64,000 bases of DNA from Octopus sinensis (Eukaryota). The stretch spans positions 20,348,464 through 20,412,463 of the forward strand of contig NC_043011.1 in NCBI RefSeq assembly GCF_006345805.1. The letters are read 5' to 3'. Of this stretch, positions 7,768 through 63,260 are shown in pieces. Numbering within the stretch: position 1 is the stretch's first letter; each line of letters begins with the position of its first letter. The notes below the pieces were generated by a model, which did not search any database, was not told the DNA's origin, and saw only the letters and a program-made list of their open reading frames with translations. Both the position numbers and the translations under genes were made by a program.

Positions 7768-7803
<36 letters not shown>

Positions 7804-10918: not shown

Positions 10919-11267
10919 CACGTGTGTATACACATATATGGTGGGCATACACACATGTAAACATATATAATCTTATGCGTATAGCAATATTTATAGACTC
11001 GCATAATTTCTTGTACACATATACATATACATCCACCCACAGACAGGCATACATGTTCTGTTCTTCTTTTATTCTTTTACACGGTTCAGTCTTTTGACTG
11101 CGGCCATGCACATATTGTCAGCCACCTACATCGGTTGTCAAGCGATGGGGGGGGGGACAAACTCAGATACAAAGACGCACACACATAAATATATACATAT
11201 ATATATATACTTTAGTACATGTATATATATGTGTGTGTCTGTGTGCTGCATTTATATATATATATAT

Positions 11268-11470
11268 AGGGAGAGTTTACTAAAAAAACAAAAGACGAAG
11301 ACAGGTGGTGTACAAAACAAACAGATGTATTAGTATTACACTCAGGAATAGAAAAAGTTTTTTACGTTTCGAGCCTACGCTCTTCTACAGAAAGGGACAC
11401 AGAAAAAAACAAGGAGAGAAACAAGGAGAGAAAAAATGTGTGTAGTGGCTAACGATCTATCATGGCGTCG
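11268..11470 (-). mobile_element. (AT)n-anchored short element, family F, with a hammerhead-like motif at 11360-11394
   Basis: Homologous to 22503-22668 and 36101-36294; all end in ...CTCCC(T)A adjoining an (AT)n run. Confidence 0.75.
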
Positions 11471-12354
11471 CAAATTTTTATTGAAGTGTACACATACATA
11501 TGCACATACGCATATGTGTTGTGTATGTGTAATATATATGTGTATGATATATGTGTATATGTAATATATATGTGCATGATATACATATGCATGTATACAC
11601 ACACACACACTTAAATGTTTCTGTTCTGTATACATCGGTACAAAATCTATATTAAAATTTATAATAACCCGAGCACCTTTTACAAAATCAGTCGAAGATT
11701 GGCTTAGAAGCAAGCCTTTAACGCTAACCACAAACTTTGACCTAACTTTGACCTTCACTCTGATGCAATTTTAGCCTTTGACATTTATGTTTATAACCAT
11801 TCTTGTATCAACCCTAAAATGCATCAACCTTAACCTCTTACAGTAGAAAACCCATAATAAAAATTCTGAATAGGCCACAGAAAACTCTCAACTAACGCAA
11901 AATGTGACCTGAATGTGGCCTACATGTTACATGACCTGCTATATAAATTTAACCTTCAACATCTGGCTTTATGTTTGTGCCAACTAAATCCCAGCAATAA
12001 CAAGCATTAACCCTTCACATTAAATTTAAGCAACCAGTAGTGGCTGCAAGACGAACACAACTTTCTTATGTCAATCCAAAGATATTGTGTTCGCCATCCT
12101 TGTCTCCCTACAAACACACACGCTCTTTCGTTTTCCATCACTACTCTGTGCACAACTGTTTCTCCTTGTCCTCTGCAAATTCATTCATACCACATCTAAT
12201 TTTCATAAAGATCGCTACACCCGTCGAATGAACCTGCCCACCACTGAAAAAATATATATTTAAGACCTGCAAAAGAACAGACTCAGTTAGGCTGATGATG
12301 GCTCGTAAACCAAAACTTCAACGTCACTGTCAACGTTTTCTCTGCAAGTGTATT

Positions 12355-12596
12355 CTTTTGTTCTTTTATTCTTTTACTTGTTTCAGTCATTTGACTGCGG
12401 CCATACGGGAGCACCAGCTTTTGTCGAACAAATCGCCCCCCCGCCCCAGGACTTATTCTTTGTAAGCTTAATACTTATTCTAGCGGTCCCTTGGGCCGAA
12501 CCGCTAAGTTACGGGGACGTAAACACACCAAGACCGGTTGTCAAGCGATGGTGGGGGGACAAATACAGACACACACACAAACATATACATATACAT

Positions 12597-12637
<41 letters not shown>

Positions 12638-13630
12638 CGTTGTGCTTATTGTCCTGTATCTCTCTCTTTTTTTTGCTTGTCTTGTTCCTTGTTTGTGTCT
12701 ATGTGTTCGACGTCTTTTTGGTGTCCTGTACACATATATGCGTGTATATGTACATGTAGAGGTAGGTACGTACATATATGTTTATATATATGCATATGTT
12801 CTATTTTATTACATATTATACGACTAAACGCACGCACCTATTAAGTAAGATTGTTCTGTTTATCAAGTTAGCCTTGATATTAACTCTCACGCGACTCTGC
12901 ATCTTTCTTTCTTCTCTCCCATTCCCTTCTTCTCTCTCTTCTCCTTCTCCTCCTCCCCCATTCCCGTCGTCCATCTGCGACGATACTTCCGTCGTAACTG
13001 CTATCCTGTCTTTTCTCGCCCGCCTTGTAAGGCTACTGGTCGACTACATTTGCTCTCTCTCGTCGTCCACGATAATCCAGCGTTGTTGCAATACTTTTTT
13101 CGTCTGGCGTTAACAGCCCTTCTTATCTTGTTCTCCTTGTCCTGTCTCTCACTGTATATATTTATTTTCCACTGTTTATATATATATTTTTTACTGTTTA
13201 TATGTTTGTACTGTCGTTACCGTCTTGTTTTTTTTTTTACCCCTCTGCGAAAAGATCTCAGAATTTTAATTGATTTGCTTTTCGCGGGAAGGAATTTTTC
13301 TTCGAAGTATACGTCTCGCTTTATCCTTCGAAACGTTTAGTAGATGAAATCTTAGCGACTGAAGAAAGGGGTTTTTTCGTTGTGCTTATGTCCTGTATCT
13401 CTCTCTTTTTTTGCTTGTCTTGTTCCTTGGTTTGTGTCTATGTGTTCGAGTCTTTTTGGTGTCCTGTACACATATATGCGTGTATATGTACATGTAGAGG
13501 TGGGTACGTACATATATGTTTATATATATGCATATGTTCTATTTTATTAACATATATTATATATATATATATATATATTATACACGGGGCTTCTTTCAGT
13601 TTCCATCTACCAAATCCACTCAGAATGCTT
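12355..13630 (-). mobile_element. SINE family A split at its internal (AT)n by a 930-bp insertion
   Basis: 3' half at 12355-12630; 5' part GGGCTTCTTTCAGTTTCCATCTACCAAATCCACTC resumes at 13583-13630. Confidence 0.8.
12634..13560 (+). mobile_element. ~930-bp element bounded by ~187-bp direct repeats (pseudo-LTR-like), inserted in (AT)n
   Basis: 12634-12820 and 13374-13560 are nearly identical (TTTTCGTTGTGCTTAT...CTATTTTATT(A)ACATAT); no TG..CA ends, PBS or PPT. Confidence 0.75.
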
Positions 13631-21512: not shown

Positions 21513-21922
21513 GGCGCAGGAGTGGCTGTGTGGTAAGTAGCTTGCTAACCAACCACATGGTTCCGGGTTCAGTCCCACTGCGTAGCATCTTGGACAAGTG
21601 TCTTCTGCTATAGCCCCGGGCCGACCAATGCCTTGTGAGTGGATTTGGTAGACGGAAACTGAAAGAAGCCTGTCGTATATATGTATATGTATATATATGT
21701 GTGTGTGTTTGTGTGTTTGTGTGTCTGTGTTTGTCCCATTAGCATTGCTTGACAACCGATGCTGGTGTGTTTACGTCCCCGTCACTTAGCGGTTCGGCAA
21801 AAGAGACCGATAAAATAAGTACTGGGCTTACAAAGAATAAGTCCCGGGGTCGATTTGCTCGACTAAAGGCGGTGCTCCAGCATGGCCTCAGTCAATTGAT
21901 TGAAACAAGTAAAAGAGTAAAA
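21513..21922 (+). mobile_element. SINE family A, full length
   Basis: Head GGCGCAGGAGTGGC to tail GAAACAAGTAAAAGAGT. Confidence 0.9.
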
Positions 21923-24624: not shown

Positions 24625-24930
24625 TTCTTTTTACTCTTTTTACTTATTCTAGCGGTCTCGATGTTACGGGGACGTAAACACACCAGCATCGATTGTCAAG
24701 CGATGTTAGGGAGACAAACACAGACACACAAACATATACACACATATACACATATACACATATATACGACGGGCTTCTTTCAGTTTCCGTCTACTAAATC
24801 CACTCACAAGGCTTTGGTCGGCCCGAGGCTATAGTAGAAGACACTTGCCCAAAGTGCCACGCAGTGGGACTGAACCCGGAACCACGTGGTTCGTAAGCAA
24901 GCTACTTACCACACAGCCACTCCAACGCCT
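24625..24930 (-). mobile_element. SINE family A (tail deleted)
   Basis: Reverse complement of the family A head and body. Confidence 0.85.
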
Positions 24931-28367: not shown

Positions 28368-28559
28368 AGGTTCAGGTGTGGCTGGGTAGTAAGAAGCTTG
28401 CTTCCCAACTATGTAATCTAAGGTTCGGTCTCACGGTGCGTCACATTGGGCAAATGCTTTCTACCATAGCCTCAGGCCAACCAAATCCTTGTGAGTCGAT
28501 TTGGTAGATGGAAACTGAAAGAAACCCGTCGTACGTGTGTGAGTGAGAGAGAGAGAGAG

Positions 28560-28613
<54 letters not shown>

Positions 28614-35864: not shown

Positions 35865-35904
<40 letters not shown>

Positions 35905-36054
35905 CACGATGGGCTTCTTTCAGTTTCAGTCTATCAAATCCACTCACAAAGCTTTGATCGGACCGAGGCTTAGAAGACATTTGCCCAAGGTGACACGCAG
36001 TGGGACTAAAACCGGAACCATGTTGGGAAGCAATCTTCTTGCCATACACCCACC

Positions 36055-36289: not shown

Positions 36290-36294
<5 letters not shown>
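36101..36294 (+). mobile_element. Family F short element between two (AT)n runs; hammerhead-like motif at 36168-36203
   Basis: CTTT-CTGTGGA-A-GAGT(GAAG)GCTC-GAA-ACGT-A-AAAG. Confidence 0.75.
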
Positions 36295-36374
<80 letters not shown>

Positions 36375-37388: not shown

Positions 37389-37438
<50 letters not shown>

Positions 37439-37455
37439 TGATAGATAGATAGATT

Positions 37456-37552
<97 letters not shown>

Positions 37553-37610: not shown

Positions 37611-38359
37611 AGCAGACGCATGGGACACGTTTCATCTTTTGTTGTTGATGATGCTGCTGCTCTTACTGTTGCCCCTTCTGCTGTTCCTTCTGTTACTATT
37701 GATGTTGTTGCTGTTATCGTCGTCATCGTTGGTGGTAGTGTTATAACCATCTGTTTCGGCGACATAAATACAGATGATGACACGGCTTAAAACATCAAGT
37801 GTAATTGACGTAACAGGAAGGACCTCCTTAAAATTTATCAGGAAGAAGTCGTTGTTACTTAGCACCAGATCGGCCCTTATTGTGCAATCATCAAAGGCAT
37901 TCCAGTTTGGCCATCCGGGTTTGTGTGTGTGTGTGTCGAATAAAGAAGAATATATATATTTAATTGTTAACTAAGAACACAGATGCGGATTGAGGGAAAG
38001 AAAGAAAATGTTGTAATTTCAGGTTTATTTTTCCCATGCCAGAATAAAAAAAGACAAAAAAAAACAGGAACAGAAAAAAACAAAGGCCATATATTCCTCT
38101 AGTGGTTTGAGTGACCTTCGTCATTCAAAAAATATGGCGTAAATTAACTCCTCCCCATTCATTCATCCACCCCCTCTCTCTTTCCCTCTCTCTTTCTCTT
38201 AAGTTGTTTGCTATAAAGGACAAATACGTCCCAAGCGTCAATTATTTCTCTGTCATTCATTCAACACCAGATACAAACCTATATCCTGGTATTTGCTGCT
38301 TATGTTATAATATATTGGAAAACATATGTGTGTGTTTAAGTATACACACAAATACACAC

Positions 38360-38557
<198 letters not shown>

Positions 38558-39894
38558 TGTTACGGAATCACCCGTCGTCGCCCGTCCCGAACGGCTCACA
38601 CAAGTTCCGCCACGGAACCCAGAGAGGAGGAGAGAGAGGAGAGACAGATAGATACTGCCACAACCCCAACAGCACAGAGATACAGAGGCACAACCCGAGA
38701 TACAACCCAAAGAGGCAAGGCAACAACTGGCAACACTGGCTTATATTCAAACAACAGTTTATACGACAATCAATTGCTACACATCAAATACATTTAAGGC
38801 AAACAACAAATCAATACATCATACGGTATACCACAGATCAAAGCATTTAACAACATGCATGTAACATATAACAGTGTTCAGTAACGACACAACAAGTCCA
38901 GATCAAATAATGTTCACGATACGTCACAGTCCAATCAGAACACTTCGATACATTATACAATGTTCGTATCACAACAATTCACGTTACATTCAACAAGTCC
39001 TTTACTCAATTCTTCACAATGTCCTTTATCGACCACATCGACAGAGTCCTGACTGTTCTTTTCTGTCGGTCCGTATACACCGTGACACATATCAATGCAC
39101 AAACACATACCTTAATTCCTAACTGAATCGCCAGTGTCCCATTCTGCACTCATCTCTGAATACTGCCAAATCCTCTGAATACTCTGCTAATTCCCCTCTG
39201 TGCATATTCCAATCGCTTGCCCCTAGGCCTCCTCGCATCCCAGCTCGCTCCCAGGAATTCCAACGCTTGCTCCTTAAATCCAAAGTTCCATCCACTCGCT
39301 CTGACCTCCAGAGTCCGTCTGTCTTCTTCCAGGACCGGCCAGCGACTCCAAGATCCGTCTGTGTTCCTCGACGACCGCTCAACGACTGCCCTTCTTGACG
39401 ACCAACTGCGAACTACCAGACCTCACTTCGTCTCTGTCCTTCTTCCACTCCCCTCATCTCCCTCTGTCTATATCGCTCTTACCCTTTCTAACTGCCCTGG
39501 TCCTTATACTCTATCTATATCCTCAATCTGTCCCTTACTGCTTATCCTTTCTATTTGCCCTCTGCTCTTACTCTATCGCTATCGCCTGCCAGACTCTTCC
39601 TATCTATCTGTCCCTTTTCTCTTACTGCCTATCTCTATCGCCTGCTGCCTATTACCCTCTCTTGACAGCTCTACCCTACTCTCACTCTCTGCCTGTCCCT
39701 CTCTGCCCCCCTCATCCTCTCTCACGACATATTCAAGGGGTGCCTGAGCGACCCTAATTCACCCGCACAAGGTCACAGGTCATTCCAAAACCCATTAGTC
39801 CCCATTAAACAAAAGACTGTCCACTTTCTACTAGACATGCCGGAACATAATTCCAATGTGGGTCACCGGGAAATGCACCAGCTAAACCGTAACA

Positions 39895-39906
39895 CTACCC
39901 CCTACC
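39895..39906 (-). other. Polypurine tract GGTAGGGGGTAG (also 43207-43218 and 46513-46524)
   Basis: Abuts the 3' LTR start TGTTAC on the minus strand in all three units. Confidence 0.85.
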
Positions 39907-39934
39907 TAAGCTTTTGTCGACCCGACAAAGCATA

Positions 39935-41825
39935 CTAAACTCGCACCTCGAGCAGCAGACTCTCCAGGGGCTGGGGGTCCCCTGGGTGGTTTCTCCTCCG
40001 GGGGTCTCACCTCCCACGGCCACCACTTCAGCACCAGCCACAGGTTGGCACCTTCCCTCTGCGGCTTGGGTAACCTACCTCCGCCAACGCCGCCAGGCTT
40101 CCTACTAGCCGCCCACAATAGGCGCACACGTCCGAGGAAGTTCCTCAAATCCCTCACACAAGAAGGGTCCGGCCAATCCTTCACAGTGGCCACCTTCCTC
40201 AGGGCTCTATAGCCCACGTAGCATCTTGCTGTACCATCTCCATTCCGCGCAATTATCGCCGACGACCAGGGACCATTCCGCTTTTCCACTGTTCCCCGTC
40301 GCCGATATCTCCTCTTGCGCTGCTGTACTGAGACCTTCCTCCGGCCTCGCTGCTTCCTCAAGCGACAACCGCCCTGGTCGACGAAACGTTCTGCCAGGTC
40401 CGTGCGACCAGATCCAACAACACTCGCGACCAACGTCCTGCGCTCTTCACCAACGGTTGCTTCTTCTCGCAACTGCATCAGCGGACCACGATCTCCCTTA
40501 ACTTCATCACTGCACCGGCAGAACTGACCCCGCCGCTGGTTTACCGTCGGCGCAGTTCCACGATTTGCCCTCTGCAAATCGCCTGCGCAGCCTTCAATAA
40601 ATCGGCCGACCCACCCAGCGCTCTGTCAGCCTCTGCCTCCACCAGGGTCCAGCCGACCCTCAATTGAGTTCCTATTCCGCACTGCATGTCGGGCTCCACC
40701 GCCCCACGCAACCATCAAATACAGAGCTCCCCCAAGTGCCTACAAAGCACCAGCGACTCCTTGCGGACCGCCTCCTCAACTGCATCCGTGGGCCACCAAC
40801 TCCTCAACTGCGTTGCCGTATCGGCAGAACTGGCCCCCCTGGTTCGCCATCTGGCACGATTCCTCGATTTGCCTTCTACAAATCGCCTGTGCCACTTCCA
40901 AAAGATCGGCCGACCCAGCCAGCGCTCCACCAGCTTCTGCTTCCACTAGGGTCCACCCGACCCTCAATCGAGCTTTCACTAGGCACTGCCTGTCGGGCTC
41001 CACCGGCCCCAAGCAACCATCAACAACCACAAAGCTCACCCAACGCTGAAGCAGTCTTCTTGGTTTCGGTGGACCCACCACCGTTCGCAGCCGTCTCGCC
41101 TCGTCAACGGGCCTGGTCCTTTTCCTCACCAGCTTCCGTCCCGCAGGCCTCACAACACACACGCCCGGCCACCAGTCCATCCACGCCTGTGGCCTCTCCA
41201 CAGTGGGAACCATACAGTCCCTCCGGGCCCCAAGAGACAGGGGTCCAGACACCAAGGGACCCGCACACGGCATAGCACCTGCCGCGACCATCACACACAG
41301 AGCCGGAACCTCGGACTCAGCGACATTCGCCCCAGACCTCGCCAGCTCTTCGTCCTGAGCTCCGAGAGACAGGGGCCGAGATGCCAAGGGCTCCAGACAC
41401 GAACAACAGCATCATCAGCCATAACAACTTCAACACAAGCCCTTGGTTAATTCAACCTCTACGGGTTCCAAATCACAAGATTTCTTGGGTACAGCGTCAC
41501 AAATTTCGGCAACCAGCCCAGTTCCGCAAACACAGCCGGTCCAGCATCACAGATTTCGGCAACACTTCCTTCACTATCTGTTTCCCTCGATGCTTCGTTC
41601 GACGGGCAATCTCTGCCCACAGGACCGTCGCTATCCCGGTCCAACACCGATCCTTCAAAGCTGACCCATCCGCAACCTCAAGCTCCCGCTGATCTGCCAC
41701 AGGCCCTGTCGCCTCCTGTCCATTCTCTCCACGAACGCGTCCGTCTGCGCCATCTGGCCCCTAACATCTCCACAATCAGAGCAAGCGAATCCCTCGTCTC
41801 CGGTCTGACAACCAGACAAATCCAT
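39935..41825 (-). CDS. Internal ORF of LTR unit 1 (frameshifted copy of a ~630-aa consensus)
   Basis: ATG (MDLSG..) at 41825 to TAG (..EVRV*) at 39935; ORF-track pieces 41655-41855, 40776-41387 and 39906-40577 cover most of it. Confidence 0.6.
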
Positions 41826-41863
41826 AGCGAAAAAGAACCGATCGAAACGCAGCAATCAGGACA

Positions 41864-41881
41864 ATCCCACTTCTGACACCA
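41864..41881 (-). other. Primer-binding site TGGTGTCAGAAGTGGGAT, complementary to the tRNA-Leu(CAA) 3' end (also 45178-45195 and 48487-48504)
   Basis: 18-nt match to ATCCCACTTCTGACACCA, 2 nt downstream of the 5' LTR in all three units. Confidence 0.9.
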
Positions 41882-43246
41882 GTTGTTACGGAATCACCCG
41901 TCGTCGCCCGTCCCGAACGGCTCACACAAGTTCCGCCACGGAACCCAGAGAGGAGGAGAGAGGAGAGACAGATAGATACTGCCACAACCCAACAGCACAG
42001 AGATACAGAGGCACAACCCGAGATACAACCCAAAGAGGCAAGGCAACAACTGGCAACACTGGCTTATATTCAAACAACAGTTTATACGACAATCAATTGC
42101 TACACATCAAATACATTAAGGCAAACAACAAATCAATACATCATACGGTATACCACAGATCAAAGCATTTAACAACATGCATGTAACAATATAACAGTGT
42201 TCAGTAACGACACACAGTCCAGATCAAATAATGTTCACGATACGTCACAGTTCAATCAGAACACTTCGATACATTATACAATGTTCGTATCACAACAATT
42301 CACGTTACAATTCAACAAGTCCTTTACTCAATTCTTCACAATGTCCTTTATCGACCACATCGACAGAGTCCTTGACTGTCTTTTTCTGTCGGTCCGTATA
42401 CACCGTGACACATATCAATGCACAAACACATACCTTAATTCCTAACTGAATCGCCAGTGTCCCATTCTGCACTCATCTCTGAATACTGCCAAATCCTCTG
42501 AATACTCTGCTAATTCCCCTCTGTGCATATCCAATCGCTTGCCCCTAGCCTCCTCCATCCCGCTCGCTCCAGGAATTCCAACGCTTGCTCCTTAAATCCA
42601 AAGTCCATCCACTCGCTCTGACCTCCAGAGTCCGTCTGTCTTCTTCCAGGACCGGCCAGCGACTCCAAGATCCGTCTGTGTTCCTCGACGACCGCTCAAC
42701 GACTGCCCTTCTTGACGACCAACTGCGAACTACCAGACCTCACTTCGTCTCTGTCCTTCTTCCACTCCCCTCATCTCCCTCTGTCTATATCGCTCTTACC
42801 CTTTCTAACTGCCCTGGTCCTTATACTCTCTATCTATACCTCAATCTGTCCCTTACTGCTTATCCTTTCTATTTGCCCTCTGCTCTTACTCTATCGCTAT
42901 CGCCTGCCAGACTCTTCCTATCTATCTGTCCCTTTCTCTTCTTCTCTACTGCCTATCTCTATCGCCTGCTGCTATTACCCTCTCTTGACAGCTCTACCAT
43001 ACTCTCTGCCTTCCCTCTCTGCCCCCTCATCTCTCTCACGACATATTCAAGGGGTGCTGACGACCCCTCTTCACCCGCACAAGGTCACAGGTCATTCCAA
43101 AACCCATTAGTCCTCCATTAAACAAAAGACTGTCACTTTTCTACTAGACATGCCGGAACCATATTCCAATGTGGGTCACCGGGAATGCACACAGCTAAAC
43201 GTAACACTACCCCCTACCTAAGCTTTTGTCGACCCGACAAAGCATA

Positions 43247-45139
43247 CTAAACTCGCACCTCCGAGCAGCAGACTCTCCAGGGGCTGGGGGTCCCCTTGGG
43301 TGGTTTCTCCTCCGGGGGTCTCACCTCCCACGGCCACCACTTCAGCACCAGCCACAGGTTGGCACCTTCCCTCTGCGGCTTGGGTAACACCTCCGCCAAC
43401 GCCGCCAGGCTTCCTACTAGCCGCCCACAATAGGCGCACCGTCCGAGGAAGTTCCTCAAATCCCTCACACAAGAAGGGTCCGGCCAATCCTTCACAGTGG
43501 CCACCTTCCTCAGGGCTCTATAGCCCACGTAGCATCTTGCTGTACCATCTCCATTCCGCGCAATTATCGCCGACGACCAGGGACCATTCCGCTTTTCCAC
43601 TGTTCCCCGTCGCCGATATCTCCTCTTGCGCTGCTGTACTGAGACCTCCTCCTCCGGCCTCGCTGCTTCCTCAAGCGACAACCGCCCTGGTCGACGAAAC
43701 GTTCTGCCAGGTCCGTGCGACCAGATCCAACAACACTCGCGACCAACGTCCTGCGCTCTTCACCAACGGTTGCTTCTTCCGCAACTGCATCAGCGGACCA
43801 CGATCTCCCTTAACTTCATCACTGCTGCACCGGCAGAACTGACCCCGCCGCTGGTTTACCGTCCGGCGCAGTTCCACGATTTGCCCTCTGCAAATCGCCT
43901 GCGCAGCCTTCAATAAATCGGCCGACCCACCCAGCGCTCTGTCAGCCTCTGCCTCCACCAGGGTCCAGCCGACCCTCAATTGAGTTCCTATTCCGCACTG
44001 CATGTCGGGCTCCACCGGCCCCACGCAACCATCAAACAGAGCTCCCCCAAGTGCCTACAAGCACCAGCGACTCCTTGCGGACCGCCTCCTCAACTGCATC
44101 CGTGGGCACACCAACTCCTTCAACTGCGTTGCCGTATCGGCAGAACTGGCCCCACCACTGGTTCGCCATCTGGCACGATTCCTCGATTTGCCTTCTACAA
44201 ATCGCCTGTGCCACTTCCAAAAGATCGGCCGACCCAGCCAGCGCTCCACCAGCTTCTGCTTCCACTAGGGTCCACCCGACCCTCAATCGAGCTTTCACTA
44301 GGCACTGCCTGTCGGGCTCCACCGGCCCCAAGCAACCATCAACCACAAAGCTCACCCAACGCTGAAGCAGTCTTCTTGGTTTCGGTGGACCCACCACCGT
44401 TCGCAGCCGTCTCGCCTCGTCAACGGGCCTGGTCCTTTTCCTCACCAGCTTCCGTCCGCAGGCCTCACAACACCACACGCCCGGCCGCCAGTCCATCCAC
44501 GCCTGTGGCCTCTCCACAGTGGGAACCATACAGTCCCTCTGGGCCCCAAGAGACAGGGGTCCAGACACCAAGGACCCGCACACGGCATAGCACCTGCCGC
44601 GACCATCACACACAGAGCCGGAACCTCGGACTCAGCGACATTCGCCCCAGACCTCGCCAGCTCTTCGTCCTGAGCTCCGAGAGACAGGGTCCGAGATGCC
44701 AAGGGCTCCAGACACGGAACAACAGCATCAGCCATAACAACTTCAACAGCCTTTGGTTACTTCAACCTCTACGGTTCCAAATCACAAGATTTCTTGGGTA
44801 CAGCGTCACAAATTTCGGCAACCAGCCCAGGTTCCGCAAACACAGCCGGTCCAGCATCACAGATTTCGGCAACACTTCCTTCACTATCTGTTTCCCTCGA
44901 TGCTTCGTTCGACGGGCAATCTCTGCCCACAGGACCGTCGCTATCCTCGGTCAACACCGATCCTTCAAAGCTGACCCATCCGCAACCTCAAGCTCCCGCT
45001 GATCTGCCCACAGGCCCTGTCGCCTCCTGTCCATTCTCTCCACGAACGCGTCCGTCTGCGCCATCTGGCCCCTTAACATCTCCACAATCAGAGCAAGCGA
45101 AATCTCCTCGTCTCCGGTCTGACAACCAGACAAATCCAT
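43247..45139 (-). CDS. Internal ORF of LTR unit 2 (frameshifted copy of a ~630-aa consensus)
   Basis: Span 1893 nt = 631 codons; contains PWSSAIIARNGDGTARCYVGYRAL and KVATVKDWPDPSCVRDLRNFLGRCAYCGRLV (RT finger and thumb motifs). Confidence 0.6.
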
Positions 45140-46552
45140 AGCGAAAAAGAACCGATCGAAACGCAGCAATCAGGACAATCCCACTTCTGACACCAGTTGT
45201 TACGGAATCACCCGTCGTCGCCCGTCCCGAACGGCTCACACAAGTTCCGCCACGGAACCCAGAGAGGAGGAGAGAGAGGAGAGACAGATAGATACTGCCA
45301 CAACCCCAACAGCACAGAGATACAGAGGCACAACCCGAGATACAACCCAAAGAGGCAAGGCAACAACTGGCAACACTGGCTTATATTCAAACAACAGTTT
45401 ATACGACAATCAATTGCTACACATCAAATACATTAAGGCAAACAACAAATCAATACATCATACGGTATACCACAGATCAAAGCATACAACAATGCATGTA
45501 ACAATATAACAGTGTTCAGTAACGACACAACAACCAGATCAAATAATGTTCACGATACGTCACAGTCAATCAGAACACTTCGATACATTATCAATGTTCG
45601 TATCACACAATTCACGTTACAATTCAACAAGTCCTTTACTCATTCTTCACAATGTCCTTTATCGACCACATCGACAGAGTCCTTGACTGTTCTTTTCTGT
45701 CGGTCCGTTACACCGTGACACATATCAATGCACAAACACATACCTTAATTCCTAACTGAATCGCCAGTGTCCCATTCTGCACTCATCTCTGAACTGCCAA
45801 ATCCTCTGAATACTCTGCTAATTCCCCTCTGTGCATATTCCAATCGCTTGCCCGGCCTCCTCGCATCCCGCTCCTCCAGGAATTCCAACGCTTGCTCCTA
45901 AATCCAAAGTTCCATCCATCGCTCTGACCTCCAGAGTCCGTCTGTCTTCTTCCAGGACCGGCCAGCGACTCCAAGATCCTCTGTGTTCCTCGACGACCGC
46001 TCAACGACTGCCCTTCTTGACGACCAACTGCGAACTACCAGACCTCACTTCGTCTCTGTCCTTCTTCCACTCCCCTCATCTCCCTCTGTCTATATCGCTC
46101 TTACCCTTTCTAACTGCCCTGGTCCTTATACTCTATCTATATCCTCAATCTGTCCCTTACTGCTTATCCTTTCTATTTGCCTCTGCTCTTACTCTATCGC
46201 TATCGCCTGCCAGACTCTTCCTATCTATCTGTCCCTTTTCTCTTACTGCCTATCTCTATCGCCTGCTGCCTATTACCCTCTCTTGACAGCTCTACCATAC
46301 TCTCTGCCTGTCCCTCTCTGCCCCCCTCATCCTCTCTCACGACATATTCAAGGGGTGCCTGAGCGACCCCTAATTCACCCGCACAAGGTCACAGGTCATT
46401 CCAAAACCCATTAGTCCTCCATTAAACAAAAGACTGTCACTTTTCTACTAGACATGCCGGAACCATAATTCCAATGTGGGTCACCGGGAAATGCACCAGC
46501 TAAACCGTAACACTACCCCCTACCTAAGCTTTTGTCGACCCGACAAAGCATA

Positions 46553-48448
46553 CTAAACTCGCACCTCCGAGCAGCAGACTCTCCAGGGGCTGGGGGTCCC
46601 CTTGGGTGGTTTCTCCTCCGGGGGTCTCACCTCCCACGGCCACCACTTCAGCACCAGCCACAGGTTGGCACCTTCCCTCTGCGGCTTGGTAACACCTCCG
46701 CCAACGCCGCCAGGCTTCCTACTAGCCGCCCACAATAGGCGCACGTCCGAGGAAGTTCCTCAAATCCCTCACACAAGAAGGGTCCGGCCAATCCTTCACA
46801 GTGGCCACCTTCCTCAGGGCTCTATAGCCCACGTAGCATCTTGCTGTACCATCCATCTCCATTCCGCGCAATTATCGCCGACGACCAGGGACCATTCCGC
46901 TTTTCCACTGTTCCCCGTCGCCGATATCTCCTCTTGCGCTGCTGTACTGAGACCTTCCTCCGGCCTCGCTGCTTCCTCAAGCGACAACCGCCCTGGTCGA
47001 CGAAACGTTCTGCCAGGTCCGTGCGACCAGATCCAACAATACTCGCGACCAACGTCCTGCGCTCTTCACCAACGGTTGCTTCTTCCGCAACTGCATCAGC
47101 GGACCACGATCTCCCTTAACTTCATCACTGCACCGGCAGAACTGACCCCGCCGCTGGTTTACCGTCCGGCGCAGTTCCACGATTTGCCCTCTGCAAATCG
47201 CCTGCGCAGCCTTCAATAAATCGGCCGACCCACCCAGCGCTCTGTCAGCCTCTGCCTCCACCAGGGTCCAGCCGACCCTCAATTGAGTTCCTATTCCGCA
47301 CTGCATGTCGGGCTCCACCGGCCCCACGCAACCATCAAATACAGAGCTCCCCCAAGTGCCTACAAAGCACCAGCGACTCCTTGCGGACCGCCTCCTCAAC
47401 TGCATCCGTGGGCCACCAACTCCTTCAACTGCGTTGCCGTATCGGCAGAACTGGCCCCACCACTGGTTCGCCATCTGGCACGATTCCTCGATTTGCCTTC
47501 TACAAATCGCCTGTGCCACTTCCAAAAGATCGGCCGACCCAGCCAGCGCTCCACCAGCTTCTGCTTCCACTAGGGTCCACCCGACCCTCAATCGAGCTTT
47601 CACTAGGCACTGCCTGTCGGGCTCCACCGGCCCCAAGCAACCATCAACCACAAAGCTCACCCAACGCTGAAGCAGTCTCCTGGTCTCGGTGGACCCACCA
47701 CCGTTCGCAGCCGTCTCGCCTCGTCAACGGGCCTGGTCCTTTTCCTCACCAGCTTCCGTCCCGCAGCCTCACAACACACACGCCCGGCCGCCAGTCCATC
47801 CACGCCTGTGGCCTCTCCACAGTGGGAACCATACAGTCCCCCCGGGCCCCAAGAGACAGGGGTCCAGACACCAAGGGACCCGCACACGGCATAGCACCTG
47901 CCGCGACCATCACACACAGAGCCGGAACCTCGGACTCAGCGACATTCGCCCCAGACCTCGCCAGCTCTTCGTCCTGAGCTCCGAGAGACAGAGGCCGAGA
48001 TGCCAAGGGCTCCAGACACGGAACAACAGCATCAGCCATAACAACTTCAACAAGCCTCTTGGTTAATTCAACCTCTACGGATTCCAAATCACAAGATTTC
48101 TTGGGTACAGCGTCACAAATTTCGGCAACCAGCCCAGGTTCCGCAAACACAGCCGGTCCAGCATCACAGATTTCGGCAACACTTCCTTCACTATCTGTTT
48201 CCCTCGATGCTTCGTTCGACGGGCAATCTCTGCCCACAGGACCGTCGCTATCCTCGGTCCAACACCGATCCTTCAAAGCTGACCCATCCGCAACCTCAAG
48301 CTCCCGCTGATCTGCCCACAGGCCCTGTCGCCTCCTGTCCATTCTCTCCACGAACGCGTCCGTCTGCGCCATCTGGCCCCTACCATCTCCACAATCAGAG
48401 CAAGCGAAATCTCCTCGTCGTCTCGGTCTGACAACCAGACAAATCCAT
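46553..48448 (-). CDS. Internal ORF of LTR unit 3 (frameshifted copy of a ~630-aa consensus)
   Basis: ORF-track pieces 47746-48372, 46977-47660, 46822-47052 and 46553-46744. Confidence 0.6.
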
Positions 48449-49866
48449 AGCGAAAAAGAACCGATCGAAACGCAGCAATCAGGACAATCCCACTTCTGAC
48501 ACCAGTTTTTACGGAATCACCCGTCGTCGCCCGTCCCGAACGGCTCACACAAGTTCCGCCGCCACGGAACCCAGAGAGGAGGAGAGAGAGGAGAGACAGA
48601 TAGATACTGCCACAACCCCAACAGCACAGAGATACAGAGGCACAACCCGAGATACAACCCAAAGAGGCAAGGCAACAACTGGCAACACTGGCTTATATTC
48701 AAACAACAGTTTATACGACAATCAATTGCTACACATCAAATACATTTAAGGCAAACAACAAATCAATACATCATACGGTATACCACAATCAAGCATTAAA
48801 ACATAAACAAACATGCACTGCATGTAACAATATAACAGTGTTCAGTAACGACACAACAAGTCCAGATCAAATAATGTTCACGATACGTCACAGTCCAATC
48901 AGAACACTTCGATACATTATACAATGTTCGTATCACAACAATTCACGTTACAATTCAACAAGTCCTTTACTCAATCTTCACAATGTCCTTTATCGACCAC
49001 ATCGACAGAGTCCTTGACTGTTCTTTTCTGTCGGTCCGTATACACCGTGACACATATCAATGCACAAACACATACCTTAATTCCTAACTGAATCGCCATG
49101 TCCCATTCTGCACTCATCTCTGAATACTGCCAAATCCTCCTGAATACTCTGCTAATTCCTCTCTGTGCATATTCCAATCGCTTGCCCCTAGGCCTCCTCG
49201 CATCCCAGCTCGCTCCCAGGAATTCCAACGCTTGCTCCTTAAATCCAAGGTTCCATCCACTCGCTCTGACCTCCAAGGTCCGTCTGTCTTCTTCCAGGAC
49301 CGGCCAGCGACTCAAGATCCGTCTGTGTTCCTCGACGACCGCTCAACGACTGCCCTTCTTGACGACCACTGCGAACTACCAGACCTCACTTCGTCTCTGT
49401 CCTTCTTCCACTCCCCTCATTTCCCTCTGTATATATCGCTCTTACCCTTTCTAACTGCCCTGGTCCTTATACTCTATCTATATCCTCAATCTGTCCCTTA
49501 CTGCTTATCCTTTCTATTTGCCCTCTGCTCTTACTCTATCGCTATCGCCTGCCAGACTCTTCCTCTCTATCTGTCCCTTTTCTCTTACTGCCTATCTCTA
49601 TCGCCTGCTGCCTATTACCCTCTCTTGACAGCTCTACCATACTCTCTGCCTGTCCCTCTCTGCCCACCTCATCCTCTCTCACGACATATTCAAGGGGTGC
49701 CTGAGCGACCCCTAATTCACCCGCACAAGGTCACAGGTCATTCCAAAACCCATTAGTCCTCCATTAAACAAAAGACTGTCACTTTTCTACTAGACATGCC
49801 GGAACCATAATTCCAATGTGGGTCACCGGGAAATGCACCAGCTAAACCGTAACAATATATAATATA

Positions 49867-50255
49867 TCTTTTACCTGTTTCAGTCATTTGACTGCGGCCA
49901 TGCTGGAGCACCACCTTTAATCGAGCAACTCGACCCCGGGACTTATTCTTTGTAAGCCCAGTACTTATTCTATCGGTCTTTTTTGCCGAACCGCTAAGTG
50001 ACAGGGACATAAACACACCAGCATCGGTTGTCAAGCAATGCTAGGGGGACAAACACAGACACACAAACACACACACATACATATATATATACATATATAC
50101 GACAGGCTTCTTTCAATTTCCGTCTACCAAATCCACTCACAAGGCTTTGGTCAGCCCGAGGCTATAGTAGAAGACACTTGCCCAAGGTGCCACGCAGTGG
50201 AGCTGAACCCGGAACCATGTGGTTGGTAAACAAGCTACTTACCACACAGCCACTC
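49867..50255 (-). mobile_element. SINE family A, full length
   Basis: Reverse complement of the family A consensus; its tail lies ~12 bp from the array's right end. Confidence 0.9.
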
Positions 50256-50884
50256 ATCAATAATACAGTGATTGTTTCTTATCAGGAACAAAATGTTTAA
50301 TAGGACTGCTATAGAAGTGCTCAATTGAATGAGACAAATATATCAAACTAAGGTTACAGAACAAACAAACAAATGCAAGGTCATTCACATAACATTTCAT
50401 ATCTCGAACATTTAATCATAGAATACTATTATGATATCACGGAAGATGAAACATAAACATCTGTACAAGCATATAAGAAAGTGTGAGAAGAAAAATGTGT
50501 GAATACAGTCATCACGGTTAATGTTAATACTTAGCGATTAAGAAATATATATTTTTTAAAAAAACATTACAACACCTAGAAAATTAAATACGTAAAATAT
50601 AGTATAAAGTAATATATAAATATATAGGTATATAAAAATATATAAAAAAAAAATATATATATAAGGAAGCATATAAATAAGTAATATTAATATATAATGT
50701 TAAAAATAAAAGTTCATCGTTTATAAAATCTTTTAAAAATTACATTTCAAATAAGGGAAACCTATAGTTAAAAACCAGTGTCCAAGCAAAAAAGAAGAAA
50801 CCATATTTACATTTATATATATATATATCTATATATATATATATATTATATATATATTATCTATCTTTTATTTATTTATTCTTA

Positions 50885-51550: not shown

Positions 51551-51716
51551 TTTAAAAAATAAATAAATAAATAAATATATATATATGTATATATATAAAT
51601 AGATATATAATATGTATATATTAAATACATATATATATATAAAAAAAATATATATGTAAATATATATATATATGTAAAATATAATATACATATATATATT
51701 TATATATATATACACA

Positions 51717-51791
<75 letters not shown>

Positions 51792-51794
51792 CAT

Positions 51795-52265
51795 ACGTAT
51801 TATATTCAGTTGAATTAGGTACTTAAGTTGAAGTACCAAGTCATTCCGGTGTTATCCGCACAGCTCGAAGTAAGGTGAATAAAATCAAAATAAGTAACAG
51901 GATGAAAAGTAGTAATACAGTTCGACCGTAACACAATATGCTATTGTCATTTATCTTATAATCCTGCTTCCGATTCCTTAGATAGTGTGTATATTTTTCC
52001 AGATAACTTCCATATGTAAGTTGTTTGAGTGGTCTTTATGGTGACCGCCTAATAATTAATTGTGTAAATATGAGGCATTAAGTGGATTCTACAAAATAGT
52101 AATCTTCTTTATAATGTTTAAATGGATTTATATATCCCCCTTAGCTAACCCGGTAATGATAGCGGTGTATTTAAATAGATGTAATGATTACATTGTTCAT
52201 TATGGATCCGCTTGGAACGGTAATACAGCATTACTAATTGACATCCTGTTACTTATTTGATTTCA
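51795..52265. mobile_element. Unclassified element between (AT)n runs with a short inverted duplication
   Basis: AATCAAAATAAGTAACAGGATG (~51883-51902) versus CATCCTGTTACTTATTTGATT (~52242-52262); both ends abut (AT)n. Confidence 0.45.
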
Positions 52266-53279: not shown

Positions 53280-54063
53280 CCTAGAGCCACGCTAATAGCT
53301 TAGGAGTGAAATTTAGGATTTCTCGGTTTTCTGGGAATCGATTTTGATAAAACTTTTCCCTGCTGGTTTGCACACTATGGCAACACTATTGTTATGTTTT
53401 CATTATTCTGTGTAACGTCCTTTCTTATTTATTTCAGATTCTTCAGTTTTTGGATGAACCATGCTAATCGCTCATGAATGAAAATAGCCCATCTAGACAT
53501 TTTTTTCGGAAAATGAAAGTTGATGATACATATTAAACATACATTGAGTATATACTTAACTGAAAACCATAATGATATTATAACATTTATTGACACAATT
53601 AATTATTTAGCCACATGTGTACCTTTTCGACGAATAACTTTAAAAACCCTATTAGTCATGGGATCTGTCAATTTCTTAATAGCAGCAGGTTGGACTGCCT
53701 CTGCTACAGTTTTGATGGTCGCCCATAAGACATCTTTCGGAGTAAAATGGCGTCCATCGGCATAAATATCTTGTTTAAGGATGGACCACAGATTTTCAAT
53801 GGGGTTGAGATTCAGAGATGCTGGCAGCCACTCCATCAACCTTTCACTTTGTATGCCGTAAGACCCTAGTAATGTTTGGGTGGTCCTAACAGAGTGGGAG
53901 GGAGCGTTGTCATGCATGAATACGAGATTCCTTAGAAGTGACAGCGGTATGCCATCTAGCCTGGGATCCAAGACCTCCTACAAGAGATTACGGTAGGCGG
54001 CTGCGATCAGTTTAACCCTTTCAGGGTCCTGACTGGGCCAACAAGACTGTCCCCAATGATACC

Positions 54064-54887: not shown

Positions 54888-55053
54888 AGGCGCAGGAGTG
54901 GCTGTGTGGTAAGTAGCTTGCTAACCAACCACATGGTTCCGGGTTCAGTCCCACTGCATGGCATCTTGGGCAAGTGTCTTCTGCTATAGCCCCGGACCGA
55001 CCAATGCCTTGTGAGTGGATTTGGTAGACAGAAACTGAAAGAAGCCTGTCGTA

Positions 55054-55094
<41 letters not shown>

Positions 55095-55551: not shown

Positions 55552-55590
<39 letters not shown>

Positions 55591-55804
55591 TTGTGTGTCT
55601 GTGTTTGTCCCCCCAGCATTGCTTGACAACCGATGCTGGTGTGTTTACGTCCCCGTCACTTAGCGGTTCGGCAAAAGAGACCGATAGAATAAGAACTGGG
55701 CTTACAAAGAATAAGTCCCGGGGTCGATTTGCTCGACTAAAGGCAGTGCTCCAGCATGGCCACAGTCAAAGGACTGAAACAAGTAAAAGAGTAAAGAGTA
55801 AAAG
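54888..55804 (+). mobile_element. SINE family A inserted in the right Tc1 TIR, itself split at its internal (AT)n
   Basis: Head 54888-55055; tail 55570-55804. Confidence 0.88.
55091..55550. mobile_element. Fold-back insertion with 114-bp perfect arms (55091-55204 / 55346-55459) and a captured spacer
   Basis: Arms are exact reverse complements; 55203-55338 is identical to 53457-53592; the tail ..AATTATTCCAAATTAATTAATTTCACCCT recurs at ~58500-58548. Confidence 0.88.
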
Positions 55805-62304: not shown

Positions 62305-63260
62305 TTAGCCTGAGTCTAAGAGGCAATGTTCTACAGTCTGTCTAAGAGGAGCAATTCCACAACATTCAAAAGCACGCTTTATAGTTTCTTTATTCAAAGT
62401 GGTAACAGCTTGGGTCGCAAAGTTCACTATCTCTTGATAAGAAGGTTTTTTACGACACCCTTTATTTGTATACTCCTTTTTGCCGTTTGAAAACCAATTC
62501 TCCCATTCAGCACGAAGAGTTTTCTTGAAAAGACCAATAATTGATACATCTAATGGCTGCAAGTAAGATGTTGTTTTAGGAGGTATAAGTTTGAGAATTG
62601 TATTCCTACGTTTGAACACTTCTCGGAGCTCTGTTTTCTTGTGCACTGAGCATTCATCCATGAATAGTACTGAATTTTGAGCATGGAATAGTTGTGCTGT
62701 TCTCTTCCCAAACACTTTGTCAGCCCACACCTGCATGAGTTCATATGTGATTGATCCCCTGTTGGAGACTGTTATGTAAATATTCTTTGGGATCTTGATT
62801 TTAGGCACGTTTTTTAATCCTTTAAGGATAATCATTGTTTTCAACACCTTTCCTGCAGCATTAACACACAACACAGCAGTAAAACGGGCTTTGGTAGCAC
62901 CACAGTGGCTAGCATCTACATTTTTATTGCCAGAAAAGTCTATGGTTGTTGAACTAAACATGCCAACGTTGTTTTAGGTGTTTCGTTCATATTATAAATC
63001 TGGCCAGCATCCTTATCTGCTGTTAATACTGGAATGATATCTAAATAGTCACTGGCGATTTGTGTTTTTTCTCCGAGTGTTTTATTGTCTGCTTGATCAA
63101 CATGTGTAATCTTTCTCACAGTCAGTTTATTCCGTTTCATAAAATTGAAAATCCATTTATCAGAACATCTAAAGCTGTTCATTCCAATTCCAAACCTTTT
63201 TACTAATTCAAAAGCATATTCCCGTAAACGGCGATAATTTACAATTATATTGTTTGCACG
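62305..63260 (-). pseudogene. pogo-superfamily (DDE_1/CENP-B-like) transposase, frameshifted, DD35D spacing
   Basis: FRCSDKWIFNFMKRN, NMNETP (first D mutated), RFTAVLCVNAAG, FMDECSVH-35 aa-(QPL)DV. Confidence 0.88.

What the first reader, a model, noticed from the sequence alone, without database searches (positions are those of the whole stretch)
38558..49854. Three-unit, shared-LTR tandem array of a young non-autonomous LTR retroelement inserted once into (AT)n
Seen: four LTRs alternate with three internal regions. Every unit keeps an 18-nt tRNA-Leu PBS and a PPT. One ATAT duplication (4 or 6 bp, ambiguous because of the AT periodicity) flanks the whole 11.3 kb. Units differ mostly by 1-nt indels plus a few substitutions; LTR4 has a private segment near 48790-48820. 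The internal region has no integrase, RNase H or YxDD motif. Known: shared-LTR arrays occur for plant TRIMs and some yeast and insect elements, arising by LTR-LTR unequal exchange or from 1-LTR circles. Inference: a trans-mobilised element with large LTRs (1.3 kb) and a 2-kb coding core that amplified in situ; I know of no description of this architecture in cephalopods.
Basis: partly seen in the sequence, partly recalled or inferred. Interest (0 to 1): 0.82.

Follow-up and report, generated by a model that had tools for sequence, protein, structure and literature searches.

The report
Octopus retrotransposon repeated three times head-to-tail
This is a defective "jumping gene" of the retrovirus-like Ty3/Gypsy kind in the octopus genome that sits as three head-to-tail copies sharing their end repeats. 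That arrangement is already well known from yeast, flies and plants, so it is a tidy but ordinary finding.

Summary
Window 38558-49854 is four 1.3-kb LTRs alternating with three 2.0-kb internal regions, with a period of about 3.32 kb. The LTR ends are TGTTACGG...CCGTAACA. Every unit has an exact 18-nt primer-binding site for tRNA-Leu(CAA) and a polypurine tract, and ATAT flanks the whole block. The element reads on the minus strand.

The window is Octopus sinensis chromosome CM016873.1. Single (monomer) copies of the same family lie at another O. sinensis locus and at an O. vulgaris locus. Both have an ATAT duplication, and both carry the same internal deletion.

The internal region is a decayed gag-pol reading frame of 649 codons, intact at the other O. 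sinensis locus. It keeps the protease-RT linker and the first ~30 residues of reverse transcriptase, fused to the motif just after the RT domain. The catalytic core, RNase H and integrase are gone. So it is a propagating, non-autonomous deletion derivative of a Ty3/Gypsy element. It is not a TRIM or a LARD.

Differences between the units are mostly private 1-nt indels, which look like long-read assembly noise. The units are probably near-identical, and the copy number still needs read support.

Shared-LTR tandems formed by LTR-LTR unequal exchange are well documented. Verdict: a new member of a known kind, of modest interest.

The parts
48507..49854 (-). LTR4, the 5'-most LTR in the element's sense orientation. 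Its PBS-proximal end reads ...CCGTAAAA instead of ...CCGTAACA. It has a private ~11-nt extra segment near 48789-48820.
46513..48506 (-). Internal region 3. PBS at 48487-48504 and PPT at 46513-46525. The gag-pol-remnant frame is broken by 10 frameshifting indels relative to the intact L001 ORF.
45198..46512 (-). LTR3, shared between units 3 and 2.
43207..45197 (-). Internal region 2. PBS at 45178-45195 and PPT at 43207-43219. The frame is broken by 13 frameshifting indels relative to L001.
41884..43206 (-). LTR2, shared between units 2 and 1. It is the noisiest copy, with 31 private substitutions that mostly sit next to indels.
39895..41883 (-). Internal region 1. PBS at 41864-41881 and PPT at 39895-39907. 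The frame is broken by 18 frameshifting indels relative to L001.
38558..39894 (-). LTR1, the 3'-most LTR in sense orientation. In sense orientation a TATA-like box lies about 200 nt from the LTR's 3' end. A 40-nt tandem duplication lies at 39306-39387.
40122..40274 (-). Reverse-transcriptase remnant in unit 1, with equivalents in units 2 and 3. The RT N-terminal motif (GPWSS..DG..R..V.YRAL.KV) is fused to the post-RT motif (KDWPDP....LRNFLG). About 150 residues of RT core, including YxDD, are missing.
40470..41043 (-). Two copies, about 77% identical, of an in-frame duplication of ~305-309 nt inside the ORF of unit 1. The same duplication is present in units 2 and 3 and in L001 and L002, so it is old in the family.
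   Evidence: (D3, D4)
38362..38557 (.). (AT)n microsatellite forming the left flank. Its last ATAT is the left copy of the target-site duplication.
49855..49867 (.). Right flank ATATATAATATAT. Its first ATAT is the right copy of the target-site duplication. A ~390-bp dispersed repeat follows.

Best explanation
[quoted passage not shown] A monomer is about 4.5-4.7 kb and consists of:
- 1.2-1.35-kb LTRs ending TGTTACGG...CCGTAACA;
- a tRNA-Leu(CAA) primer-binding site;
- one ~650-codon frame;
- a polypurine tract.

The frame has an orphan N-terminal part that is probably Gag-derived. After it come the protease-RT linker, about 30 residues of RT, and the motif that follows the RT domain.

**How it moves (inferred).** It has no RT catalytic core, RNase H or integrase. 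Its RNA must therefore be reverse-transcribed and integrated by proteins from an autonomous partner, which was not identified. The integrase used prefers ATAT.

**How the array formed (inferred).** One such element integrated on the minus strand at an ATAT near the edge of an (AT)n tract. Out-of-register homologous exchange between its LTRs (sister chromatids or homologues) then produced LTR-int-LTR-int-LTR. A second exchange between whole offset units gave the present four LTRs and three internal regions. The single outer target duplication was kept.

**Shown:** anatomy, family membership, the deletion map, mobility of the family, and the shared-LTR junctions. **Inferred:** trans-mobilisation, the exchange mechanism, and that the assembled copy number is true.
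For: **Anatomy**
- The array starts and ends exactly at LTR termini.
- PBS and PPT are present in all three units in the correct relative position on the minus strand.
- The PBS is identical to the tRNA-Leu(CAA) 3' end.
- Internal junctions are LTR|PBS and PPT|LTR with no target duplication between units, as expected for shared LTRs and not for repeated insertion.

**Family**
- L001 (O. sinensis) is a monomer with TSD ATAT and an intact 649-aa ORF.
- L002 (O. vulgaris) is a monomer with TSD ATAT and an ORF broken by a 14-nt deletion.
- Internal regions are about 94% identical to the window's, and the same RT deletion is present at all loci.

**Gypsy origin**
- HMMER against 1.84 billion proteins found 53 polyproteins beyond the octopus copy, at E = 3e-9 to 1e-3.
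- Seven of these were scanned: all carry RT and RNase H-like domains, and most also protease and/or integrase.
- BLASTP maps P0001 132-231 to Pol 305-410, and P0001 221-261 to Pol 553-593. These flank the RVT_1 domain at 382-542.
- Ty3 RT (4ol8) is the best PDB hit, with the same two stretches.

**The ORF is real**
- 649 open codons, against a maximum of 273 in 1000 composition-matched shuffles.
- dN/dS is 0.42-0.52, with P about 0.003-0.005.

**Mechanism precedent**
[quoted passage not shown] It cites Ke and Voytas 1997 for Ty5.
Against: - No reads were available, so the three-unit count rests on one PacBio-based assembly. In this stretch the indel:substitution ratio among units is 34:21. Between two independent copies in other places it is 6:84, so this stretch is visibly poorly polished.
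- Nearly all variants are private to one unit. Nothing in the sequence records the order of duplication, or tells unequal exchange from integration of a multimer.
- No autonomous partner was found in the window, L001, L002 or the protein databases.
- The Gag identity of the N-terminal 480 residues is unsupported: no Pfam or PDB hit, and no similarity to the Gypsy polyproteins retrieved. The AlphaFold model was useless, at pLDDT 38.
- As assembled, none of the three units has an open frame.
- The antisense frame that shares wobble positions gives a similar dN/dS.
Confidence: 0.62

Rival explanations
1. Assembly artefact. The locus really holds a monomer (two LTRs) or a dimer, and the long-read assembler over-counted a 3.3-kb periodic repeat.
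For: - Differences between units are dominated by private 1-nt indels and by paired-indel 'substitutions'. This is the signature of an unpolished long-read consensus.
- Two independent copies of the family differ by 84 substitutions and only 6 indels.
- The window is from GCA_006345805.1, a PacBio plus Hi-C assembly (my own knowledge of that assembly; not checked here).
Against: - An 11.3-kb array is within the span of single PacBio reads, so assemblers usually get such counts right.
- Each unit carries its own multi-nucleotide differences: 6-nt blocks private to LTR1 and to LTR2, an ~11-nt segment in LTR4, and 3-nt blocks in LTR3. That is easier to explain by distinct copies than by re-use of one pile of reads.
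- Poor polishing is also exactly what a real multi-copy array produces, because short reads cannot be placed uniquely in it.
Confidence: 0.22
2. The multimer arose through the element's replication cycle and not by chromosomal unequal exchange. Candidate routes are cDNA-by-LTR homologous recombination into a resident copy (as for yeast Ty5/Ty1), or rolling-circle or recombination products of 1-LTR circles. Integration of a concatemeric cDNA is a third possibility.
For: - The shared-LTR structure and the single outer ATAT duplication fit these routes as well.
- The units are near-identical with no nested sharing of variants, which is compatible with near-simultaneous origin.
- PMC5932611 lists rolling-circle concatemers as one route to TE tandems, and cites Ke and Voytas 1997 for LTR-mediated tandem elements.
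Against: - Nothing in the sequence favours these routes over unequal exchange.
- The two other copies seen are plain monomers.
- The star-like variant pattern is mostly noise and carries no timing information.
Confidence: 0.13
3. A generic 3.3-kb tandem duplication (macrosatellite) whose phase only happens to look like LTR-internal-LTR, or repeated independent insertions into the same ATAT site.
For: A repeat with 3.4 copies will always show an 'extra' partial unit that can be read as a terminal repeat.
Against: - The partial unit begins with TG and ends with CA, has an 8-bp terminal inverted repeat, and is bordered inside by a perfect tRNA PBS and a PPT.
- The same 'partial unit' is the LTR of ordinary two-LTR monomers at two other loci.
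- Independent double insertions would leave two abutting LTRs separated by a target duplication (PMC5932611). That is not seen.
Confidence: 0.02

Closest known systems
Shared-LTR tandem LTR retrotransposons formed by LTR-LTR recombination. Examples: yeast Ty5 (Ke and Voytas 1997, as cited in PMC5932611) and most D. melanogaster LTR families (McGurk and Barbash 2018, PMC5932611).
   Same: n internal regions with n+1 LTRs, no target duplication at the internal junctions, and one duplication outside. A single insertion is the starting substrate.
   Different: Here there are three units of a non-autonomous element with long (1.3 kb) LTRs in a cephalopod. The fly data come from short-read junction calls and mostly concern dimers.
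Tandem arrays of plant non-autonomous elements: Cassandra (PMC7215508) and Wukong TRIM (PMC4528315).
   Same: A non-autonomous LTR element in a head-to-tail, LTR-sharing arrangement attributed to unequal crossing-over.
   Different: TRIMs are tiny, with LTRs of about 100-250 bp and non-coding interiors. This element has 1.3-kb LTRs and a 2-kb interior that is one long reading frame with recognisable pol remnants.
Gag-retaining or internally deleted non-autonomous LTR elements that depend on an autonomous partner, such as barley BARE-2 and rice Dasheng/RIRE2 (my own knowledge, not checked here).
   Same: Conserved LTR ends, PBS and PPT; loss of RT, RNase H and integrase; the defective form propagates as a family.
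   Different: The partner is unknown here. The retained N-terminal protein has no detectable Gag signature.
Ty3/Gypsy (Metaviridae) retrotransposons
   Same: - The pol remnants match Ty3/Gypsy-type polyproteins best.
- TG..CA LTRs, a tRNA PBS, a PPT and a 4-bp target duplication.
   Different: It lacks the catalytic RT core, RNase H and integrase. The protease active-site motif was not recognisable.

Membership tests
LTR retrotransposon (structural definition) | Direct long terminal repeats ending 5'-TG...CA-3' with short terminal inverted repeats | tested here: met
   TGTTACGG...CCGTAACA in all four LTRs, with one base changed in LTR4 and one in LTR2. The same termini occur in L001 and L002.
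LTR retrotransposon (structural definition) | Primer-binding site complementary to a tRNA 3' end just inside the 5' LTR | tested here: met
   An 18-nt exact match (19 with the next base) to tRNA-Leu(CAA)+CCA lies 2 nt from the LTR in all three units. It is exact in L002 and has 1 mismatch in L001.
LTR retrotransposon (structural definition) | Polypurine tract abutting the 3' LTR | tested here: met
   AGGTAGGGGGTAG directly abuts the LTR in all units and in L001 and L002.
LTR retrotransposon (structural definition) | Short target-site duplication | tested here: met
   ATAT at L001 in ordinary AT-rich DNA, and ATAT at L002. ATAT (or ATATAT) in the window, where the (AT)n context makes it uninformative alone.
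Ty3/Gypsy superfamily | RT sequence grouping with Ty3/Gypsy | tested here: inconclusive
   Only about 100 residues of pol survive. Their best matches are polyproteins with Gypsy-type domains, and Ty3 RT in the PDB. No tree could be built from so short a remnant.
Ty3/Gypsy superfamily | Domain order PR-RT-RNase H-integrase | not testable with these tools
   RNase H and integrase are absent from this family. The order could only be read in the unidentified autonomous partner.
Non-autonomous LTR element | Lacks the catalytic RT core, RNase H and integrase, yet occurs as several transposed copies with the same defect | tested here: met
   The deletion is mapped. It is the same at three loci in two species, with separate target duplications.
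TRIM (terminal-repeat retrotransposon in miniature) | Very small element with LTRs of roughly 100-250 bp and a short non-coding interior | tested here: not met
   LTRs are 1315-1348 bp and the interior is 1989-1994 bp with a 649-codon frame.
LARD (large retrotransposon derivative) | Long non-coding internal domain | tested here: not met
   The interior is almost entirely one ORF that is far longer than chance and under mild constraint.
Shared-LTR tandem array | n internal regions and n+1 LTRs, every internal junction being LTR|PBS or PPT|LTR, with no intervening target duplication | tested here: met
   This holds in the assembly only; there is no read support.
Gag-encoding element | Capsid or zinc-knuckle signatures in the N-terminal ORF | tested here: not met
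   No Pfam hit at E up to 10 and no PDB hit. No similarity to the Gypsy polyproteins retrieved. The structure model was unusable.

The most novel reading that the evidence does not exclude
The family is more than a passive deletion derivative. Its conserved 650-residue protein has an orphan N-terminal 480 residues and is kept at about 94% nucleotide identity while the U3 parts of the LTRs have diverged to a mosaic of about 73%. That protein might be a new kind of Gag-like or hijacker protein that lets the element parasitise a partner's RT and integrase. The ATAT/(AT)n targeting together with a propensity to multimerise might make the family a seed for new satellite DNA in octopus genomes.
Probability: 0.1. 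Interest if true: 0.55.

Novelty: new member of a known kind. Interest (0 to 1): 0.3.

Why it matters
- It adds a clearly delimited non-autonomous Ty3/Gypsy-derived family to the thinly described LTR complement of octopus genomes. The family has defined termini, a PBS-Leu(CAA), an ATAT target and a mapped RT deletion. PMC13282606 lists only 15 LTR families among its counts for O. vulgaris.
- If reads confirm it, this is a concrete cephalopod example of the first step from a transposon to a tandem array.
- It is also a caution for annotation. The units' apparent 3% divergence is mostly assembly noise, so dating such arrays from LTR identity would mislead.
- An O. vulgaris gene model starts inside a copy of the element.
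- None of this changes current understanding of how LTR elements behave.

Tried and rejected
- **Pfam scans.** The window's minus-strand ORFs, the intact L001 ORF and the L002 ORF gave no family, even at E up to 10.
- **Word-indexed protein searches.** Window 43247-43681(-) found nothing. P0001 found only itself. The 649-aa ORF found only a chimeric O. vulgaris gene model. No autonomous partner turned up.
- **Exact-protein look-ups.** Two array ORFs and a flank ORF are not on record.
- **PDB search of the N-terminal 476 residues.** Only noise.
- **phmmer of the N-terminal part against the retrieved Gypsy polyproteins.** Nothing.
- **AlphaFold on window 46977-47660(-).** Mean pLDDT was 37.8, so no fold search was run.
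- **Rfam on the array.** No family, so no Cassandra-like 5S or tRNA-like module in the LTR.
- **tRNA genes.** None in the window.
- **Metagenome scan for the PPT-LTR junction.** 0 hits.
- **tblastn of three full Gypsy Pol proteins against the window, L001 and L002.** Only the remnants matched.
- **Rejected readings.** A plain macrosatellite, repeated insertion into one site, and TRIM or LARD membership. Reasons are given under the rival explanations and the membership tests.
- **Early guess on the protease.** I read part of the duplicated segment as a degenerate protease active site. One weak BLASTP stretch (E = 0.024) is all that supports it, so I do not claim it.

Full report
**1. What is in the sequence**

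Self-comparison of window 38000-50500 gives a single tandem repeat that begins at 38557/8 and ends at 49854. The offsets are about 3.33, 6.64 and 9.95 kb, and identity including gaps is 96.6-97.1% (the families agree).

The extra 0.4 unit is not an arbitrary phase. It starts TGTTACGG and ends CCGTAACA, an 8-bp terminal inverted repeat with the TG...CA of LTR elements. The same boundaries recur at each period. This gives:
- LTRs at 38558-39894, 41884-43206, 45198-46512 and 48507-49854.
- Internal regions at 39895-41883, 43207-45197 and 46513-48506.

No other copy, solo LTR or fragment of the element lies elsewhere in the 64 kb. The array stands out from its AT-rich surroundings: 48-59% G+C with GC skew of about -0.35, against 28-43% outside.

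**2. Orientation, PBS, PPT and target site**

The element reads on the minus strand. On that strand each internal region begins AC-TGGTGTCAGAAGTGGGAT and ends AGGTAGGGGGTAG directly before the next LTR.

The 18 nt are the exact complement of the 3' end of tRNA-Leu(CAA) with CCA added; a 19th base also matches. Four D. melanogaster tRNA-Leu(CAA) genes printed in PMC4536317 end ...GGGTTCGAATCCCACTTCTGACA.

In sense orientation the LTR has a TATA-like box about 200 nt from its 3' end. That leaves a U3 of about 1.1 kb and a short R-U5.

The flanks read ...ATAATATAT and ATATATAATATAT.... ATAT or ATATAT is duplicated, but within an (AT)n tract (38362-38557) this alone proves little. The monomers described in section 5 settle it.

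**3. Differences between the units are mostly noise**

| Comparison | Indel events | Substitutions | Source |
|---|---|---|---|
| Three internal regions of the array | 34 | 21 | |
| Four LTRs of the array | 45 | 55 | |
| Two independent copies elsewhere (L001 vs L002 internal regions) | 6 | 84 | |

- About half the indels among the units touch a homopolymer.
- 12 of 21 substitutions in the internal regions, and 32 of 55 in the LTRs, lie within 5 nt of an indel.
- Almost every difference is private to one unit, with only about three sites shared by two units.
- The local alignments show typical paired-indel patches. One example is GGGAATGCACACAGCTAAAC-GTAAC against GGGAAATGCACCAGCTAAACCGTAAC.

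The ratio among the units is therefore not an evolutionary one. It is what an insufficiently polished long-read consensus looks like.

The window is 100% identical over 11.7 kb to Octopus sinensis GCA_006345805.1, chromosome CM016873.1. Window coordinate c corresponds to record position 20,348,463 + c. To my knowledge this is a PacBio plus Hi-C assembly; I did not check that here.

Three consequences follow:
- The units are probably near-identical, so the array is young.
- The apparent 3% divergence must not be used for dating.
- The number of units cannot be taken as proven.

A few multi-nucleotide private differences argue mildly that the units are distinct copies.

**4. What the internal region encodes**

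As assembled, each unit has only fragments of reading frame. Hopping between units, however, one minus-strand frame is open across nearly the whole interior.

Pfam finds nothing. A phmmer search of window 39906-40622(-) against the PDB puts Ty3 reverse transcriptase first (4ol8, E = 0.11). It matches in two stretches: RT 97-144 and RT 274-299.

A full HMMER search of the same 238 residues against 1.84 billion proteins gave two kinds of hit:
- One close relative, P0001 (E = 8e-95).
- 53 further proteins at E = 3e-9 to 1e-3. All seven of these that were scanned carry RVT_1 and RNase H-like domains, and most also carry aspartic protease and/or integrase domains. Those that carry a name come from arthropods and amphioxus.

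BLASTP of P0001 against one of them maps the lesion:
- Residues 132-231 align to Pol 305-410. This is the protease-RT linker and the first ~30 residues of RVT_1, through ...V.YR.L..V.
- Residues 221-261 align to Pol 553-593. This is the KV.AVK.WP.P....R.FLG motif just after RVT_1, which spans 382-542.

A second polyprotein gives the same picture. About 150 residues of RT core, including the YxDD site, are missing. The frame stops about 45 residues later, so RNase H and integrase are absent too.

The junction lies where the two Pol segments resemble each other (KV.T.KD.YP.P and KV.AVK.WP.P). This would suit a template switch at short homology. That is an inference.

**5. It is a mobile family**

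P0001 is 'uncharacterized protein LOC118760873 [Octopus sinensis]'.

*L001 (O. sinensis, contig VCDQ01007407.1)* is an ordinary monomer:
- LTR at 7771-8943, PBS with one mismatch, interior at 8944-10962, PPT, LTR at 10963-12121.
- ATAT on both sides, in DNA that is not a microsatellite.
- One intact ORF of 649 codons (8972-10921).

*L002 (O. vulgaris, chromosome OX597842.1)* was reached through a gene model that begins inside the element (P0055). It is another monomer:
- LTRs at 8578-9834 and 11822-13033, and ATAT duplication.
- The ORF is split by a 14-nt deletion.

The three interiors are about 94% identical and share both the RT deletion and an in-frame ~305-309-nt internal duplication.

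The LTRs are only about 73-75% identical overall. The U3 is a mosaic, with 100-nt blocks ranging from 30% to 93% identity. The R-U5 is conserved at about 70-98%, and the termini are identical.

Three separate integrations all flanked by ATAT indicate a real target preference.

**6. Is the ORF meaningful?**

- A 649-codon open frame is far beyond chance for this composition: P is about 2e-12, and the longest frame in 1000 shuffles was 273 codons.
- Fixed differences between the window's units and L001 give 21 synonymous and 27 non-synonymous changes. That is dN/dS 0.42, with binomial P = 0.003.
- L001 against L002 gives dN/dS 0.52, P = 0.005. The two other sense frames show no such signal. The antisense frame that shares wobble positions does, as expected.

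So there is mild purifying selection, of the kind expected if the protein matters during transposition and decays afterwards.

The N-terminal ~480 residues have no detectable relatives or domains, and a single-sequence AlphaFold model was unusable. Calling this part Gag rests only on its position.

In the window the frame is interrupted 18, 13 and 10 times in units 1, 2 and 3. One frameshift, at codon 492, is shared by all three.

**7. How it most likely works**

*Shown:* an LTR element with complete cis signals but no enzymes, present as independent insertions in two Octopus species.

*Inferred:*
- Its RNA is packaged, reverse-transcribed from a tRNA-Leu(CAA) primer and integrated at ATAT by proteins of an autonomous Ty3/Gypsy partner that recognises the same ends. 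That partner was not found in any sequence I could reach.
- For the array, the standard route is out-of-register homologous exchange between the 5' and 3' LTRs of one insertion. This yields a dimer that shares the middle LTR. Further exchange between offset 3.3-kb units can then expand it.
- This keeps one outer target duplication and puts no duplication at the internal junctions, exactly as observed.

[quoted passage not shown] They contrast this with double insertion, which leaves a target duplication in the junction. Plant Cassandra and Wukong arrays are explained the same way (PMC7215508 and PMC4528315).

cDNA-mediated or circle-mediated routes give the same product and cannot be excluded from sequence alone.

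**8. Comparison, novelty and verdict**

- It works like, and structurally is, a shared-LTR tandem of a non-autonomous Ty3/Gypsy derivative.
- It fails the size definition of TRIMs and the non-coding-interior definition of LARDs.
- Superfamily assignment rests on about 100 residues of pol and is best called 'Ty3/Gypsy-derived'.
- I found no description of this family or of such arrays in cephalopods in the papers searched. The kind of structure and its origin are well established in fungi, insects and plants.
- The finding is real and neatly resolved, but ordinary: a new member of a known kind.
- The main open point is technical (read support for three units). The main biological loose ends are the unidentified partner and the orphan N-terminal protein.

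**9.

I did not build a majority-rule full-length sequence of the element from the three units. The units were compared piece by piece, and the naturally intact ORF at L001 served as the reference instead (see the referred step).

Noticed in passing
window 38554-38557 and 49855-49858; L001 7767-7770 and 12122-12125; L002 8574-8577 and 13034-13037: All three independent insertions of the family are flanked by the same 4-bp duplication, ATAT, in AT-rich DNA. This points to a sequence-specific target preference of the (unknown) integrase.
   Followed up: partly
window LTRs versus L001 7771-8943 and L002 8578-9834: Internal regions of the three copies are about 94% identical, but the LTRs only about 73-75%. 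The U3 is a mosaic, with 100-nt blocks from 30% to 93% identity, while R-U5 and the 8-bp termini are conserved. This suggests fast U3 turnover or LTR swapping between subfamilies.
   Followed up: partly
L002 10001-26315 (O. vulgaris OX597842.1): The annotated O. vulgaris gene model P0055 starts inside the element's ORF. It is named a 'secG-like' protein and has RING and Death domains. 24% of the 649-aa TE ORF is covered, at 91% identity. It is either a chimeric annotation or a TE-initiated transcript.
   Followed up: partly
window 49862-50260, with copies near 4126-4545, 6344-6721, 12370-12607, 21520-21916, 24663-24922, 28378-28596, 35901-36053, 54896-55074 and 55558-55790: A ~390-bp dispersed repeat (SINE-like; 72-94% identity between copies) occurs ten times in the window. 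One copy directly borders the array's right flank. Similar copies are in the O. vulgaris locus L002.
   Followed up: no
window 40470-40735 and 40777-41043 (and the equivalent positions in units 2 and 3, L001 and L002): An in-frame ~305-309-nt duplication, about 77% identical, lies inside the element's ORF. It is shared by all copies, so it predates the split of the subfamilies. Its protein product has no recognisable domain.
   Followed up: partly
window 39895-41883 and equivalents: The element's sense strand is unusually G-rich (39% G, 19% A) and about 59% G+C, in a genome region of about 35% G+C. Most retroelement sense strands are A-rich. No explanation was sought.
   Followed up: no
window 47031, 43725 and 40412 (codon 492 of the L001 frame): All three units share a 1-nt difference from L001 that shifts the frame between the orphan N-terminal part and the pol remnant. 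It could be an inherited lesion, an L001 peculiarity, or the relic of a gag/pol frameshift site.
   Followed up: no
window 53603-53971 (-), 62305-62961 (-): Remnants of DNA transposons: a DDE_3 (Tc1/mariner-type) fragment with E = 4e-6, and a DDE_1 (pogo/Tigger-type) ORF of 218 aa with E = 4e-25. The latter's exact protein look-up identified the window as O. sinensis CM016873.1.
   Followed up: partly
window 37389-37551, 36293-36372, 50803-50879, 51559-51795: Dense microsatellites around the array: (ATAG)41, several (AT)n and (AG)n tracts. Long 'ORFs' in the window outside the array are mostly translations of such repeats.
   Followed up: no
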